A stretch of DNA of 64,000 nucleotides from Octopus sinensis (taxonomy: Eukaryota). The DNA is taken from NCBI RefSeq assembly GCF_006345805.1, contig NC_043008.1, forward strand, positions 47,430,001 through 47,494,000, read 5' to 3'. This document shows positions 3,240-52,480 of this stretch, in pieces (positions within the stretch are counted from its first letter, which is position 1; every line of letters starts with the position of its first letter). The notes below the pieces were generated by a model. The model was not told the DNA's origin. It made no database searches and worked only from the letters and a program-made list of their open reading frames with translations. Position numbers and translations under genes: made by a program.

Positions 3240-5066
3240 ATAACTCTCGGATAGTCCTTAATTACCGGTTGTTCTTTACTTGAAAGCAGGCAATAACAAA
3301 TCACCAAAGGTTTCAAGTAGTGCCTTCTCCTGTGACTCAAAGAGACAGTAGTCTCCTTAGAATGTGAGATGTACCCAATAACGCTGTCTTCTGGATCACT
3401 GTGAACCTGAGAGCAGTTCCAATATTCTTAATAGGTTAATATGATAGAAGGTGTCAGCTGCCCACAGCCAGCAGACCAAGTTGATATTTGTTTACTGGTC
3501 ATGCTTCAAGAACCCTGTGAAGAATTCTTGCTGTTCTAAGTAACGCTGATTTCTGGAAGGGCTTTACCTTTACATTTGTACCAAGCTTTTTCAGCCATGC
3601 TGGTATTTAGGTACTGATACTGCCAATTGCACTAATTACTATTGGTTATACGTCTACTCTCCTCATTGACCACAACCTTCGTATTTCCCACTTAAAATTT
3701 TCGTAGTCTTTTCAGTTTTTCTTCTTTATCTTTGAACGTGTTTTCACCGGGATTATCATGTCGATTATCATGCACGTTCTCTCTTATTCACCGCAACAAT
3801 GTCCGGTTTCCGATGTCTGGTCAGGTGGTTGCCCTGTATCATTACACGGTATAGGATTTTGCAATTTTCGTTCTGAGCGACTCCTTTTGGGGTTTGTTCG
3901 TACCACGTTTTCGTTCGTTGAAGGCCGTGATATCCACGGAGCGGATCATTCTTGCCACATTGGCATGTCTTTTGTATTCGCAGGCATTCCACAACGATGT
4001 GCCATACCATTTCATCCCTCTCACCACACATTCTTCATCTGTTGCTGTCAGTAGTGTTGTCCATTCTGCATTTCCCATAGTTAGTCCTGAACGTTTGTGT
4101 TTCTGCTGCGCATATAAGTGTTTCTGTCTCTATCTTCAGGTCACTCCTCTTCATCTATAGCCACCGGTCTTCTGTACCTATCTGGACGTTCGTACCTCTT
4201 GCAACCTGACCGTACACTTTTTCTCCCTTCATGCTGTTTCATTCTTTGTGTTCTTTACCTCTTTAAGGTTTTTATTCTTTGGTACACAGTTATCAGTTTT
4301 AATGACGCCAAACTTCTTCACGCATCACAACATCGGTTACGTGGTATTTTTTATTTAACATCCTAAGCTCTTTTCCTGTTTCGACGCAATCCCGGCAAAC
4401 CTATCCCACCCTTCTCCAGGATTTAGTTGAATTCTAGTATGCCAAGGTATTTGTAACCCTCTTTTCAATTTGTTTAATGAGTTCTCTGTTAGATAATTCT
4501 ATCTCTGAGAGGGAGTGCACCTTACCTCTTTTGAAGTACATTATGCCACAGTTCTTGAGACCGAATTCCATTCGAATATCAGCATTAAAACAGAGGACCT
4601 TCTTCACCAGAGACCTCACTTGTGCCTCATCGTTGCCATACAATTTCAAATTATCCAAGAATAGGATATGGTTAATTGTTTGGGATTTTCCATTTAGCTG
4701 AAATCCCAGATTTATTTTTCTAAGTACCAAGATCACAAGGATTATGCAGAGAACAAAAAGTAATGGAGATAAGTTATCACCTTGGAAAATCCCTCTTCTG
4801 ATGCCCAGGGTCCCTGATCTTTGTCCATAGGAGATCAACTTAGTTTTCCACCCCCACCATACCCCTCTTCAGAAAACACGTTACATTCCTCGCAATTCCA
4901 AACAAATCTAAGCATTGGATGATCCATGAATGTGGAATCATATAATAAGGTTTGTGATAGTCAATCCAAGCCATTCCCAAATTTGTTCTCCTTCGTTTAC
5001 AATCTCGCATTAACATTTTGTCTCTCAATTATTGGTGTTTGGTATCTCTGTATCTCTCCTACAACC
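3240..5066 (-). mobile_element. 5'-truncated, decayed R4/Dong-type (RLE) non-LTR retrotransposon
   Basis: RT motifs AWIDYHKPY..IPHSW, RRGIFQGDNLSPLLF, HILFLDNLKL; CCHC-like CGERDEMVWHIVVEC; RKPDIVAV endonuclease. Ends in a (CAA)n tract; boundaries approximate. Confidence 0.85.
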
Positions 5067-17497: not shown

Positions 17498-17576
<79 letters not shown>

Positions 17577-17820
17577 ATATACATATATAGTTTTCAATTA
17601 GTCAATTTAGGGTACCAAAAAAAAATTCAATAGAAATTTATCGCTACCAGCGGCCTGGTGGAAAAGAGAAAATAGTCATCGACTAAATATATAAATATAA
17701 CAATTTAGGAGTGACCCTAACGGGTCATTCGTCCACCAGAAAGAGCAGCCATAACTCACACCGCCAAGTAGTAGTATTCAGAAATTAGGTGAAAATTTAA
17801 AAACATTTACCCTAATTCAT

Positions 17821-17919
17821 CTTTTAGACGTTGCAACGTTCTGTGTCATTAATGATTAAATTAGCTTAATTAAATTAAATTAAGCTAATCTACCATAGGT
17901 TACACTTCATCAGTAAAAA
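17821..17919 (-). ncRNA. type I hammerhead copy with one core A missing (GAAC instead of GAAAC)
   Basis: Reverse complement of the 18492-18591 motif except for a 1-nt deletion. Confidence 0.6.
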
Positions 17920-18491
17920 ACCTGGGAGAGACAAATATACACGAGGCGTCTGTATCGATGCCTACGGAATATCTGTCTTAAAATTTTCAAGACTGACGTA
18001 TTCGCGCCAAACTTATCAGCAGTAAATATAAACTGCCGATTAAATCTCAGAATTATTCAGAAAATTATCAATTAGTCAATTTAGGGTAGCAAAAAAAAAT
18101 TCAATAGAAATTTATCGCTACCAGCGGCCTGGTGGAAAAGAGAAAATAGTCATCGACTAAATATATAAATATAACAATTTAGGAGTGACCCTAACGGGTC
18201 ATTCGTCCACCAGAAAGAGCAGCCATAACTCACACCGCCAAGTAGTAGTAATTCAGAAATTAGGTGAAAATTTAAAAACATTTACCCTAATTCATCTTTT
18301 AGACGTTGCAACGTTTCTGTGTCATTAATGATTAAATTAGCTTAATTAAATTAAATTAAGCTGAGATTGAATCGGCAGTTTATATTTACTGCTGATAAGT
18401 TTGGCGCGAATACGTCAGTCTTGAAAATTTTAAGACAGATATTCCGTAGGCATCGATACAGACGCCTCGTGTATATTTGTCTCTCCCAGGT

Positions 18492-18591
18492 TTTTTACTG
18501 ATGAAGTGTAACCTATGGTAGATTAGCTTAATTTAATTTAATTAAGCTAATTTAATCATTAATGACACAGAAACGTTGCAACGTCTAAAAG
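18492..18591 (+). ncRNA. type I hammerhead ribozyme with long branched stem II
   Basis: TTTTTA CTGATGA A GTGT...ACAC A GAAAC GTTGCAAC GTC TAAAAG. 6-bp stem I, intact core, palindromic ACGTTGCAACGT stem III, GUC triplet (cut after 18585). Confidence 0.8.
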
Positions 18592-18719
18592 ATGAATTAG
18601 GGTAAATGTTTTTAAATTTTCACCTAATTTCTGAATTACTACTACTTGGCGGTGTGAGTTATGGCTGCTCTTTCTGGTGGACGAATGACCCGTTAGGGTC
18701 ACTCCTAAATTGTTATATT

Positions 18720-18752
<33 letters not shown>

Positions 18753-18786
18753 GAAAAAACAATGCTAAAATAATTTTATAAAGAAC

Positions 18787-35703: not shown

Positions 35704-35780
35704 GGTCGAGCTCTCGGCCTGATGATCCTGTGAATGCTCAGGCGAAACTCTGGCGTATCAAGTAACTGATTAGACCAAAA
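35704..35780 (+). ncRNA. degenerate type I hammerhead (PLE pLTR fragment)
   Basis: CTGATGA T CCTGTG AATG CTCAGG C GAAAC (35719-35748). Distal TTTGGTC/GACCAAA closure, proximal stem I/III eroded. Confidence 0.5.
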
Positions 35781-36336: not shown

Positions 36337-36388
36337 GATGGCTGCTGTTTGTCATAAAACGGTAACTGGAGTATTCCTGCTGGGAAAG
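36337..36388 (-). CDS. M13 peptidase exon: (S)FPAGILQLPFYDKQQP(S)
   Basis: 52 nt, tctttttccAG acceptor, GTACGT donor. FPAGILQxPF motif; phases join both neighbours. Confidence 0.95.
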
Positions 36389-41101: not shown

Positions 41102-42348
41102 TTGTGTTATCCCATAAATAATGCGGTTTTTTTCAATTGCATGAACTAAAAGTCGGATAGGGACAGGATAAGCTGCCTGCATCTAAGTAGGTAGTAATTC
41201 TGCCTTCTCCTTATTCTTAGTGCATGTTTTGAAGAGACATTTTTTCAAAGCTATAATGGATGCGACAAAGGTGCATATTCGGCATATTTTGCTTTATGAG
41301 TTCAATAAAGGAAACAACTCAATGGAAAGTGTGGGGAATATTAATGAAGTATATGGAGATCGGACAATATGCGTAAGCCATTGTCAACGGTGATTCCAGA
41401 AATTCCGAGCCAGAAATAACAGCCTAGAAGACAAGCCACTTCCTGGCAGATCTGCAGAGTTCGACGTGTATGTCCTGCAATCCCTGGTATAGCAAAATCC
41501 TACCGTAACTGTTGAGGAAATAGCGAAGAAGCTTACATTTGATGCTTCCGCCATTCATCGACACCTGTGTGCCATCGGAAAAGTCAGCAAATTGGGTCAA
41601 TGGATTTCTCACAAACTTTCCGAGTCTAATCGCGCGCAGAGAGTGAATGTGTGCTCTTCTTTGCTGTCACGTCTCATAAATGAACATTTTTTGGACCGAA
41701 TATTGACTGGTGACGAGAAATGGGTTCTCTGTTAAAATGTCAAGCGCCGAAGACAGTGGATAGGGAAAGGAGAAACACCGGCACCGCAGGCAAAGAAGGG
41801 CTTCACCGAAGTAATGTTTTGTTAACTGTTTGGTGGAATATGAAAGGGTTAGTCCACTTTAAAATTTTAAACCCAAACCAAATGGTAACAAAGAAGATTT
41901 ACGGTGAGCAACTTGCGTGGCTTAAGTTAGCACTAGAATAAAAATGACCATCTTTGGTTTCAAAACGGAAGGTATTCTTCCATCAGAATAATGCTTGGCC
42001 ATATACAGCAAGGATGACATTCCAAAGGTTGGAGCAGTTTGAATGGGTAACGATGCCCCACCCATTATATTCGCCGGACATTGCCTCATCTGATTATCAT
42101 TTAAAATCATTTGGACGGAAAAATATGAATTCTGTGGACGAGGTCAGAACAGTACTGGAGGAATATTTTTTGTCATGGTCAAGTGAATTTTGGAAGTGGG
42201 GCCTTGCAAGTCTACCAGATAGATGGATGGAAGAGCATTGTAGAAAATGAAGGAGAGTATATTTTAGATTAAAAAAGAACTTTCTTTATTTTAATTTTGA
42301 AAAATAAAAGAAGTATTAAAAGTATGCCATATTTATGGGATGACCCAC
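41102..42348 (+). mobile_element. near full-length decayed mariner
   Basis: TIR-like TTATCCCATAAATAATGCGG / ATATTTATGGGATGACCC. From ATG 41256: HIRHILLYEFNKG, GQWISHKL, ILTGDEKW, HPLYSPDIASSDYHL, with stops. Confidence 0.92.
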
Positions 42349-42462: not shown

Positions 42463-42562
42463 TGAGAGGAAAAAACGGAGAGAGAACGAAATATGTGTGT
42501 ATATATATATATATATATACATATTTCATTCTCTCTCCGTTATATATATATATATATATATA

Positions 42563-42938
42563 AATTTATATATAGAGGGCATTATACATACATGCCAGAA
42601 GGCATTATACATACATGCCAAACGCTAAGAGGGACAATCAGTCATTTCTACCAAAAATATTACTAATCCCACCGAATGCAATTTTTCAAAGTAAGACATT
42701 TAAAAATATAGACCTGTATCACAGTGATTTCATACTTACGTAATCATCAGCAGGCCTGAATGTAATACATTCAGGCCTGCTGATGATTACGTAAGTATGA
42801 AATGTCTTACTTTGAAAAATTGCATTCGGTGGGATTAGTAATATTTTTGGTAGAAATGACTGATTGTCCCTCTTAGCGTTTGGCATGTATGTATAATGCC
42901 TTCTGGCATGTATGTATAATGCCCTCTATATATAAATT
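42563..42938. repeat. fold-back palindrome (centre 42765) of a PLE pLTR-like segment
   Basis: Arms match base for base except 29 bp (42698-42726) absent from the right arm, bounded by ATTT microhomology. Confidence 0.95.
42710..42757 (-). ncRNA. type I hammerhead ribozyme on the neprilysin pre-mRNA strand
   Basis: AGGCCTG CTGATGA T TAC GTAA GTA T GAA ATCA CTG TGAT A CAGGTCT. 7-bp stem I, intact core, 4-bp stem III, AUA triplet (cut between 42717 and 42716). Confidence 0.8.
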
Positions 42939-43053
42939 AATATGTTCAATAAGAAATAATTATTTTCGAATTTTTTTCTCTTATGAGGTTTTTACGCTAT
43001 CTACCTGACAATTTCTTGTTAAGTTTTCCTTATTAAGTAGTTGTCCTTAATTG

Positions 43054-43091
<38 letters not shown>

Positions 43092-43378
43092 ACAGGCGGT
43101 GAGGCAGGCAGAGAGACAGAGTGCTGGTCGAAGAGTTGAGGAAACATACTTTTGTGTGTTGTGTGTGTGTGTTGTGTGTGTGTGTGTGTGTGCGTGCGTG
43201 TTTAACGAGAACAAGAATAATAAACAACTAAAATTTTTTGATAATTATCGTCTGTGGTTTTGTCTGAAGATCAGATAATGATATTTAATGTTATTGTGAG
43301 AGACAACCTGATATATAATGCATCAGTCAGACAGTATGGAACACAGAATATGTCCCAGTAAACAAAAAAATTACTTAC

Positions 43379-43437
43379 AGATAGAATTGCGTGTTGAGCT
43401 GTAAAATGCATTGACCACGGCTGGTTGTGTAATCCAC
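43379..43437 (-). CDS. M13 peptidase exon: WITQPAVVNAFYSSTRNSI(S); most 5' exon recognised
   Basis: 59 nt, tataaaatAG acceptor, GTAAGT donor. VNAFY substrate-binding motif. Confidence 0.95.
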
Positions 43438-51329: not shown

Positions 51330-52480
51330 TAGGCAGGAAGACTTTCATAACCTTAACTCCAGATATTATATAAGAGATCGTAAACCGAAAGATATGTTCA
51401 CTGGTCTATAAACTAAACGGCCAATGGGTTGAGGTTGGAATATAACAAACGTCACAGTTATGCCGCCTTATCGGAAATCGATTTGTTCGCCAATATACTG
51501 AAAGAATTTTAAGTTTACAACAGGAAACAACAGGGATATTGGTTAGGCTTGCAACTCAGTGTACGGAGAAGCAAGTTCTCAACTGGCACGAGGAATTGGT
51601 CTATATTTCTATTTCAATAAAAACGTAGAGGCTACTCCCACTCAAAAACAGCCTGAAAGGAATCGATCCCCGAATGATCAAGAAGGGTTAACAAAAGAAT
51701 TGCGTTGCAATTAGACAATTGTGGTGCAGTCCTGGAGTGGATGGTAGAGGGAAAAACAACATTGTTAATGAAAGATCGGTCAAAAGCAATGAGGTTGGCA
51801 ATTACCGACCCGTTGCTTGTTTCACCATCCTATGAAAAGTATTAACAGGTATCCTCGCAGGCAAAATATATAAGTTCCTTGCGGAAAACAATCTGCTAGA
51901 AGTAGAAGAAAAGGGATGCCAAAAAGGATCCAAGGGTACCACGAACCACTTTATGATAGACAAAGTTATAATGAAGGATTGTAAACGGTACCGAAAAAAC
52001 TTGTGCATGGCCTGGATTGACTTTAAAAAGGCTTACCACATGTTGCCGCATTCGTTTATTTTGGAAACACTCGACATGTGTGGAATAGCTGAGAACGTGT
52101 GTGCATTGATTAAGAAGATCATACGTAGTTGGAAAATACGTCTTCCTTGTAACAAGCAGCACTTAGTCGAGGTAACAATGAAAAGAGGTATCTTCCAAGG
52201 AGATTCTTGTTCACCTCTGTTATTTTTCTTATAGCCTTGGTCCCACTTTCTGTAGACCTACGCAACGTCAACGTGCACTGTGTGCTGTGAGAAAGAATGG
52301 ACCTCATCTCAACCACCTTGATTTAAAGTTGTTCGCATAAACAGATCCTGACAGGAAGAGGCTGGTTGAGACTGTGCAAAAGTGCAGCGAGGGTCTAAGG
52401 ATGGAATTCAGTATCTCTAGCTGGCAAGTCTTACTTTGAAGTGGGTGGAAAGAGTAAATTTTAGGGGCATAGAATTGCCA
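51330..52480 (+). mobile_element. R4/Dong-type LINE RT fragment (second, diverged copy)
   Basis: NYRPVACFTILWK-like, MAWIDFKKAYHMLPHS, KRGIFQGDSCSPLLF. Confidence 0.85.

What the first reader, a model, noticed from the sequence alone, without database searches (positions are those of the whole stretch)
42563..43055. Self-caged ribozyme: intact intronic hammerhead inside a fold-back whose other arm lacks exactly the cleavage half
Seen: a 376-bp palindrome. The left arm encodes, on the neprilysin strand, a complete type I HHR (42757-42710; 7-bp stem I, AUA site). The mirror arm lacks 29 bp (ATTT microhomology) covering stem III, the cut site and the 3' strand of stem I, so the plus-strand copy is dead. 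Inference: in the pre-mRNA the antisense arm is made first and should pair with the HHR 5' half, giving a dsRNA of about 170 bp with the cleavage site looped out. That would repress the ribozyme and create a strong ADAR substrate 440 nt from a splice donor. If the host is a coleoid, where A-to-I editing is extensive, editing or helicases could gate cleavage.
Basis: partly seen in the sequence, partly recalled or inferred. Interest (0 to 1): 0.9.

Follow-up and report, generated by a model that had tools for sequence, protein, structure and literature searches.

The report
Intronic palindrome with inert hammerhead look-alike
A young, almost perfect 386-bp palindrome sits in an intron of the octopus neprilysin-like 1 gene and happens to spell a weak hammerhead-ribozyme look-alike, but the look-alike is locked in a long RNA hairpin and there is no evidence that it is a working or regulated ribozyme.

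Summary
The sequence observation is correct. A 386-bp palindrome spans 42558-42943 (376 bp inside the single mismatch). One arm carries 29 extra bases bounded by ATTT. On the minus strand, 42757-42710 can be drawn as a type I hammerhead. The host is Octopus (vulgaris/sinensis) neprilysin-like 1, also on the minus strand. The palindrome starts 435 nt after a GTAAGT donor in a 6,990-nt intron.

The ribozyme reading is weak:
- **Stem II:** only 3 bp, with a U.U mismatch where hammerheads keep G10.1-C11.1.
- **Tertiary contact:** stem I has no loop for one.
- **Rfam:** at most 13.9 bits against a threshold of 52.
- **Fold:** the hammerhead fold is not the best fold even in isolation (about 0.3% occupancy).
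- **Copies:** no second copy or family was found.

In the transcript its 5' half pairs with the arm made just before it (38 perfect bp, -62.7 against about -8 kcal/mol). Editing every A of that arm in silico does not free it.

A motif of this quality is rare per window (about 4e-4), but on the order of ten are expected per octopus genome. The most likely reading is an ordinary young inverted duplication or foldback element next to a (TA)n tract, giving a generic ADAR/Dicer-type hairpin. Copy number and read support could not be tested here.

The parts
42558..42764 (-). Left arm of the palindrome (207 nt). Read on the minus strand from the centre outward, it carries the full hammerhead-like motif at its 5' end.
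42765..42765 (.). Single-base centre of symmetry.
   Evidence: I2: 38-nt arms, 100% complementary, 1 nt apart
42766..42943 (+). Right arm (178 nt). It is the mirror copy lacking the 29-nt segment, is transcribed first in the pre-mRNA, and pairs with the hammerhead's 5' half.
42710..42757 (-). Hammerhead-like motif of type I topology. Stem I is 7 bp, the core is CUGAUGA/GAA, stem II is 3 bp plus a GUAA loop with U.U at its base, and stem III is 4 bp with a 3-nt loop. The AUA site would put the cut between 42717 and 42716.
42702..42730 (.). 29-nt segment present only in the left arm. It can equally be placed at 42698-42726 because ATTT flanks it. It supplies most of stem III (loop and 3' strand), the cut site and the 3' strand of stem I, and is bulged out in the hairpin.
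42574..42619 (.). Tandem 23-nt duplication (AGAGGGCATTATACATACATGCC x2) near the outer end of the left arm. Its mirror is at 42881-42926.
   Evidence: D3, D4
42541..42575 (.). (TA)n-rich tract abutting the left end of the palindrome. A second (TA)n tract lies at 43054-43089.
42474..42541 (.). Separate 68-bp palindrome centred on (TA)n, directly next to the main one (34-nt arms, 91% complementary).
   Evidence: (I7)
43379..43437 (-). Exon of neprilysin-like 1 (aa ~522-541 of P0002). The consensus donor GTAAGT is at 43378-43373.
36337..36388 (-). Next exon (aa ~542-558). The acceptor AG is at 36390-36389, which closes the 6,990-nt intron holding the palindrome.

Best explanation
This is a young, nearly perfect inverted duplication (a 386-bp palindrome) lying next to a (TA)n microsatellite. 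It sits in a 6,990-nt intron of Octopus neprilysin-like 1.

Origin (inferred): either replication template switching or fold-back at the cruciform-prone TA tract, or insertion of a foldback/MITE-like element. A 29-bp deletion between ATTT microhomologies in one arm then broke the perfect symmetry.

Behaviour (computed): when the intron is transcribed, the two arms snap into a hairpin of about 178 bp.

Consequence (inferred from established ADAR and Dicer biology): the hairpin is a generic substrate for promiscuous A-to-I hyper-editing and possibly for small-RNA production, like inverted repeat pairs in other animals' introns.

The hammerhead-like motif is a sub-threshold look-alike. It may be a chance match or a decayed relic. 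Its 5' half is buried in the hairpin before its 3' half is even made, so it does not act as a ribozyme or as a switch.
For: - The palindrome and the indel are real and far beyond chance.
- Two further near-identical inverted duplications next to (TA)n lie in the same 64 kb: 17591-18725 at 98.7-100% identity, and 42474-42541. This points to a general process.
- The hammerhead models of Rfam give no hit at gathering score in the whole window. They give none at E <= 10 in 1 kb. When only 65 nt are searched they reach 13.9 bits against 52.
- The U.U at 10.1/11.1 contrasts with the 'highly conserved G10.1-C11.1' of animal and PLE hammerheads (PMC4209133).
- The isolated motif is no more stable than shuffles (z = -0.57), and the hammerhead fold has about 0.3% occupancy.
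- The cage helix is -62.7 kcal/mol against about -8 for the hammerhead fold, and it forms at every transcript length.
- In-silico editing of all A's in the cage strand does not release the motif.
- There is no second copy in the window.
- The arm's open frame has no relative among 5.8 billion proteins.
- One arm alone is not unusually structured, z = -0.57.
- A 29-bp asymmetry plus one substitution between the arms is what a real, partly stabilised genomic palindrome would show. A fold-back read artefact would not look like this (inference).
Against: - A motif this complete is rare by chance in one window: about 4e-4 for a stem I of at least 7 bp.
- Animal type I hammerheads are normally carried by retroelements that insert at (TA)n and form inverted arrangements. 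A relic of a true ribozyme therefore cannot be excluded.
- A U.U at the base of helix II occurs in an active axolotl family, with 22% cleavage in 1 h.
- Genome-wide copy number, presence in other Octopus assemblies or reads, RNA editing and cleavage could not be tested. All three cephalopod gene ranges were too long for DNA retrieval.
Confidence: 0.6

Rival explanations
1. Retroelement relic. The two arms are a head-to-head pair of 5'-truncated copies of a Penelope-like element end or an animal retrozyme. Such elements naturally carry a type I hammerhead. The pair inserted into (TA)n, and the hammerhead is real by descent but degenerate and now inert.
For: - Both arms read from the centre outward in hammerhead-sense orientation and end in TA-rich sequence.
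- PLEs show inverted 5'-truncated copies, microsatellite ((TA)n) targets and hammerheads near their 3' ends (PMC8557442).
- In S. mansoni, pairs of minimal hammerheads 100-700 bp apart on opposite strands mark truncated PLEs (PMC4209133).
- Helix III here is nearly palindromic, as in those families.
- The chance rate per window is only about 4e-4.
Against: - There is no G10.1-C11.1, which those families conserve strongly.
- No other copy lies in the window, and the arm's frame has no homologue.
- There is no tandem direct arrangement, and the arm RNA is not rod-like, z = -0.57.
- No cephalopod hammerhead family turned up in the literature searches.
- The reverse-transcriptase fragments in the window are 9 kb or more away and match only the general RVT_1 model.
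Confidence: 0.2
2. Assembly or sequencing artefact. The mirror arm comes from a chimeric fold-back long read and does not exist in the animal.
For: A 1-nt centre and 99% arm identity are what fold-back chimeras give. Three inverted duplications next to low-complexity TA tracts in one window could reflect mis-assembly.
Against: The palindrome is small, internal, and joined to unique sequence on both sides. The arms differ by a 29-bp microhomology-bounded indel and one substitution, which a mirrored read would not produce. No read data were available to test this directly.
Confidence: 0.1
3. This is an active intronic hammerhead held off by its antisense arm, and it is released by ADAR editing or helicases to cut the neprilysin pre-mRNA.
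For: The core letters and three helices can be drawn. The cage geometry and order of transcription are as described. The host is a coleoid with extensive editing (editing from established knowledge).
Against: - The motif is sub-threshold and has a weak stem II.
- The hammerhead fold is disfavoured even in isolation.
- Complete editing of the cage strand does not free stem I.
- Essential core adenines lie in the duplex and would themselves be editing targets.
- There is no evidence of conservation or of a family.
Confidence: 0.03
4. A functional hairpin-RNA locus. The inverted repeat is kept because it yields endogenous siRNAs or miRNA-like RNAs, or because it modulates splicing of the adjacent 59-nt exon.
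For: The hairpin is a very stable perfect duplex 435 nt from a splice donor. Generic miRNA-hairpin models align to it, although far below their thresholds at 55 against 100 bits.
Against: A perfect 178-bp duplex is unlike a pri-miRNA. There is no conservation data, and all scores are below threshold. Near-identity of the arms indicates youth rather than long-term selection.
Confidence: 0.07

Closest known systems
Intronic inverted-repeat hairpins that are hyper-edited by ADAR (for example inverted Alu pairs in primates and young repeat pairs across Metazoa)
   Same: Two inverted copies lie within one intron and fold into a long, nearly perfect dsRNA. They are expected to be edited promiscuously and need no sequence-specific function.
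   Different: Here the two arms touch (1-nt spacer) and are 99% identical. They were not shown to belong to a repeat family, and editing was not measured.
Type I hammerheads of animal retrozymes and Penelope-like elements (PMC7229834, PMC4209133, PMC8557442)
   Same: The topology is type I. The core has CUGAUGA...GAAA...UH and helix III is nearly palindromic. The setting is low in GC, TA-rich sequence is nearby, and there is an inverted partner on the other strand.
   Different: There is no G10.1-C11.1 and helix II has only 3 bp. Loops 1 and 2 make no contact. There is no tandem direct repeat, no detectable family and no nearby PLE ORF. Rfam models reject the motif.
Conserved intronic hammerheads of amniotes (Rfam Hammerhead_HH9 and HH10)
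   Same: The motif sits in an intron on the sense strand of a protein-coding gene, and HH9 is the best-matching Rfam model.
   Different: HH9 and HH10 are ultraconserved, carry full tertiary contacts and score above threshold. This motif scores 13.9 against 52 bits, and no conservation could be shown.
Palindromic AT-rich repeats and foldback/MITE elements
   Same: It is a near-perfect palindrome of a few hundred bp next to an AT-rich tract, with a small asymmetric deletion near the centre that limits cruciform formation. A mariner remnant lies 300 bp away.
   Different: Apart from their TA-rich outer ends the arms are not especially AT-rich. Because the target is TA-rich and self-complementary, no unambiguous terminal inverted repeat plus TA duplication can be defined. 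Copy number is unknown.

Membership tests
Hammerhead ribozyme (Rfam clan CL00010) | Conserved core: C3 U4 G5 A6 N7 G8 A9, G12 A13 A14, A15.1-U16.1, H17 | tested here: met
   Read directly from the sequence and recovered by my descriptor.
Hammerhead ribozyme (Rfam clan CL00010) | Three helices around the core, with helix II closed by G10.1-C11.1 | tested here: not met
   Helix I is 7 bp and helix III is 4 bp. Helix II is only 3 bp with U.U at 10.1/11.1, which the HH9 alignment flags as non-canonical. G10.1-C11.1 is 'highly conserved' (PMC4209133), but one active axolotl family has U.U.
Hammerhead ribozyme (Rfam clan CL00010) | Covariance-model score at or above the curated gathering score | tested here: not met
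   No hit at gathering score. No hammerhead at E <= 10 in 1 kb. The best score is 13.9 bits against 52 when only 65 nt are searched.
Hammerhead ribozyme (Rfam clan CL00010) | Loop 1 / loop 2 tertiary contact needed for activity at cellular Mg2+ | tested here: not met
   Stem I is an uninterrupted 7-bp helix whose flanks (UUC / AUAUU) do not pair, so there is no internal loop to dock on the GUAA loop.
Hammerhead ribozyme (Rfam clan CL00010) | The hammerhead fold is the favoured fold of the motif | tested here: not met
   -8.3 against an MFE of -10.3 kcal/mol, about 0.3% occupancy, z = -0.57 against shuffles.
Hammerhead ribozyme (Rfam clan CL00010) | Site-specific self-cleavage | not testable with these tools
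   Needs an in vitro transcription and cleavage assay.
Animal non-LTR retrozyme | Tandem direct repeats of 170-400 bp, each with a type I hammerhead, whose monomer RNA is highly self-paired | tested here: not met
   The arrangement is inverted rather than direct, with one full motif only. The single-arm RNA has z = -0.57.
Penelope-like element (truncated, inverted insertion) | Membership of a dispersed family related to a PLE with RT and GIY-YIG ORFs, with a hammerhead in the pseudo-LTR | tested here: inconclusive
   The geometry and the (TA)n setting fit. No second copy lies in the window, no homologue was found, and Octopus genome DNA could not be retrieved.
Intronic inverted-repeat dsRNA (ADAR hyper-editing substrate) | Two inverted copies within one transcription unit that fold into a long duplex | tested here: met
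   Both arms lie within the 6,990-nt intron. The hairpin is about 178 bp at -308.7 kcal/mol.
Intronic inverted-repeat dsRNA (ADAR hyper-editing substrate) | Clustered A-to-G mismatches in RNA-seq | not testable with these tools
   No octopus RNA-seq reads are accessible here.

The most novel reading that the evidence does not exclude
The motif is a catalytically competent minimal hammerhead that was duplicated head-to-head. Its antisense copy now acts as a built-in cage in the pre-mRNA. Helicases, slow transcription or heavy editing occasionally let it fold and cut the neprilysin-like 1 intron. That would make it a ribozyme gated by an ADAR-sensitive duplex in a coleoid.
Probability: 0.03. Interest if true: 0.8.

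Novelty: new member of a known kind. Interest (0 to 1): 0.2.

Why it matters
If my reading holds, this is one more intronic inverted repeat, of local interest only. It would be a likely hyper-editing hotspot and a possible fragile site in a roughly 400-kb octopus gene. It also shows that hammerhead-like strings of this quality arise about ten or more times per large genome without function. It would matter only if the motif cleaves and the cage is regulated. In that case it would link RNA editing to ribozyme control, which has not been described. The energetics computed here argue against that.

Tried and rejected
1. **Exact ORF look-ups.** I looked up the spurious ORFs spanning the palindrome centre and the 29-nt segment in public assemblies. 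Neither is on record.
2. **Protein search with the arm's open frame.** It found no homologue. This is a weak test, because non-coding repeats are rarely called as genes.
3. **Fetching the orthologous locus.** I tried O. sinensis, O. vulgaris and Argonauta hians. The gene ranges are 391, 406 and 253 kb, so no DNA was returned. P0002 itself has no contig on record.
4. **Metagenome scan.** An exact scan for the 24-nt core plus stem II found 0 matches.
5. **Identifying the assembly.** The C-terminal exons are identical in O. vulgaris and O. sinensis, so the source cannot be told.
6. **miRNA reading.** The generic miRNA-family hits (55 against 100 bits) only reflect a perfect hairpin, so I rejected this reading.
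7. **SINE origin.** No tRNA-like sequence was found.
8. **A family of hammerhead cores in the window.** The excess of hits without stem I is the same locus counted three times, plus two unrelated cores.
9. **Literature.** Searches for hammerheads in cephalopods found nothing specific, and the 2026 retrozyme preprint does not mention cephalopods.

Full report
**What is there**

The region holds a 386-bp palindrome. The left arm is 42558-42764 (207 nt), the centre is a single base at 42765, and the right arm is 42766-42943 (178 nt).
- The arms are identical except for one substitution at 42562 and a 29-nt segment present only in the left arm.
- That segment is bounded by ATTT on both sides, so its placement can slide by four bases.
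- Each arm carries a tandem 23-nt duplication near its outer end.
- The left end abuts a (TA)n tract, and another (TA)n lies 110 bp beyond the right end.
- As RNA the region folds into one hairpin of -308.7 kcal/mol, against -82 +/- 6 for shuffles.

**The host gene**

Conceptual exons on the minus strand carry the M13 peptidase motifs.
- A search with the unmapped N-terminal part masked as X returned Octopus neprilysin-like 1 (P0002, O. vulgaris) at 100% identity. O. sinensis XP_029643579.1 is in the same cluster.
- tblastn maps aa 522-738 onto eight exons in the window.
- The exon just upstream of the palindrome is 43437-43379, with a GTAAGT donor at 43378.
- The next exon starts at 36388 after an AG acceptor, so the intron is 6,990 nt and the palindrome begins 435 nt after the donor.
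- The whole gene spans about 391-406 kb in the two Octopus assemblies.

**The hammerhead-like motif**

Minus strand 42757-42710 reads AGGCCUG CUGAUGA U-UAC-GUAA-GUA-U GAA AUCA-CUG-UGAU A CAGGUCU.
- All core letters are present. Stem I has 7 bp with one G.U, stem III has 4 bp with a 3-nt loop, and the site is AUA.
- The 29-nt segment supplies most of stem III (its loop and 3' strand), the cut site and the 3' strand of stem I. The plus-strand mirror copy therefore stops after GAAAU.

The weaknesses are as follows.
- Stem II has only three pairs, with U.U at 10.1/11.1.
- Stem I is a plain helix with no internal loop to contact loop II.
- Rfam gives nothing at gathering score in the whole window. 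It gives no hammerhead at E <= 10 in 1 kb. It reaches 13.9 bits against a threshold of 52 for HH9 when only 65 nt are searched, with the U.U flagged.
- Folded alone, the 58-mer is no more stable than shuffles (z = -0.57).
- The hammerhead secondary structure scores -8.3 against an MFE of -10.3 kcal/mol, about 0.3% of the ensemble. This is because UGAU of the core competes with UGAU of stem III for AUCA.
- Published animal hammerheads keep G10.1-C11.1 (PMC4209133). One axolotl family with a U.U there still cleaves weakly, at 22% in an hour (PMC7229834). The mismatch therefore weakens the case without excluding it.

**Chance**

- My type I descriptor allows a 10.1/11.1 mismatch and requires stem II >= 3 and stem III >= 3. 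It finds this one full hit in the window.
- In 2,500 dinucleotide-preserving shuffles the rate per window is 0.0032 for stem I >= 5 bp and 0.0004 for >= 7 bp. It is 0 for >= 7 bp with stem III >= 4 bp. The reversed window gives none.
- That is rare for one window. For a genome of about 2.7 Gb (size from general knowledge, about 42,000 windows), on the order of ten or more such motifs are expected by chance.
- Other core-like strings in the window are the same locus counted again, plus two unrelated cores without stem I.

**The cage**

- Transcription runs from high to low coordinates, so the right arm is made first.
- In simulated transcripts ending at 42740, 42727, 42710, 42700, 42650 and 42558, the stem I 5' strand (42757-42751) is always paired with 42773-42779.
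- The inner 38-bp helix alone is worth -62.7 kcal/mol.
- By the same numbers, the hammerhead should essentially never form.

I tested the proposed release by editing.
- Turning all 23 A's of the cage strand into G leaves -73.4 kcal/mol.
- Forbidding those A's from pairing at all still leaves -25.5 kcal/mol, with stem I held by the A-poor GGCCUG/CAGGCC block. The hammerhead-only structure scores -9.1.
- A6, A9, A13, A14 and A15.1 of the core lie inside the duplex. Editing there would inactivate the core (inference from classical hammerhead mutagenesis).

**Is it a family?**

- There is no other copy in the window.
- The arm's open frame has no relative in the protein collection.
- The exact ORFs are not on record, and a metagenome scan found no match.
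- One arm alone is not unusually structured, z = -0.57, unlike retrozyme monomers.
- These are weak negatives, because Octopus genomic DNA could not be retrieved.

**Context that points to a general process**

- The same window has a complex at 17591-18725. A unit of about 470 bp is followed by a partial direct copy and then an inverted copy, at 98.7-100% identity. (TA)n tracts flank it on both sides.
- A 68-bp palindrome centred on (TA)n lies directly next to the main one.
- A mariner Mos1-type transposase remnant lies at 41954-42250 (E = 8e-15 to Mos1). Reverse-transcriptase fragments lie elsewhere.
- Penelope-like elements are described as inserting into (TA)n, forming inverted 5'-truncated copies and carrying hammerheads (PMC8557442; PMC4209133). 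A relic of such an element is therefore the main rival to chance.

**Verdict**

- The best reading is a young inverted duplication or foldback element at a TA tract, with a later microhomology deletion. It gives an ordinary intronic hairpin whose likely fate is hyper-editing or dicing.
- The hammerhead string is a look-alike or a dead relic.
- The 29-bp difference between the arms argues for a real genomic palindrome rather than a mirrored read, but reads were not available.
- Nothing in this work called for a referred step.

Noticed in passing
window 17591-18725: A complex rearrangement. A unit of about 470 bp (17591-18064) is followed by a partial direct copy (18065-18362, 98.7%) and an inverted copy of 17688-18050 (18361-18725, 99.2%). 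This includes a 201-nt inverted repeat at 100% identity. (TA)n tracts flank it at 17502-17565 and 18709-18763.
   Followed up: partly
window 42474-42541: A 68-bp palindrome (AACGGAGAGAGAA.GAAATATG...(TA)n...CATATTTC.TTCTCTCTCCGTT) centred on a TA microsatellite, directly adjacent to the main palindrome.
   Followed up: partly
window 41954-42250 (+): A remnant of a mariner transposase. The 98-aa ORF aligns to residues 243-334 of Mos1 transposase (E = 8e-15), although Pfam gave no hit. It ends about 300 bp before the palindromes.
   Followed up: yes
window 4437-4868 (-) and 51836-52231 (+): Reverse-transcriptase fragments (Pfam RVT_1, E = 3e-5 and 4e-9), probably decayed non-LTR retrotransposons in the introns.
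   Followed up: partly
window 35719-35764 (+): A second CUGAUGA...GAAA core with a 4-bp stem II (CCUG/CAGG) and one extra base on either side of the stem, but no stem I at all. It is consistent with the chance rate of 0.47 per window for such partial motifs.
   Followed up: partly
whole window; gene level: The neprilysin-like 1 gene is very large: 391 kb in O. sinensis, 406 kb in O. vulgaris and 253 kb in Argonauta hians. The window's 64 kb holds only the last eight exons (aa 522-738), and no further exon was found in the 20 kb upstream of 43437.
   Followed up: partly
window 42741-42748 and 42782-42789: The stem II sequence is the perfect octamer palindrome TTACGTAA, which I recall as a PAR-bZIP/CRE-like binding site. 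The stem I sequence CAGGCCTG is also self-complementary. Two of the three 'helices' therefore rest on short self-complementary words. Not tested.
   Followed up: no
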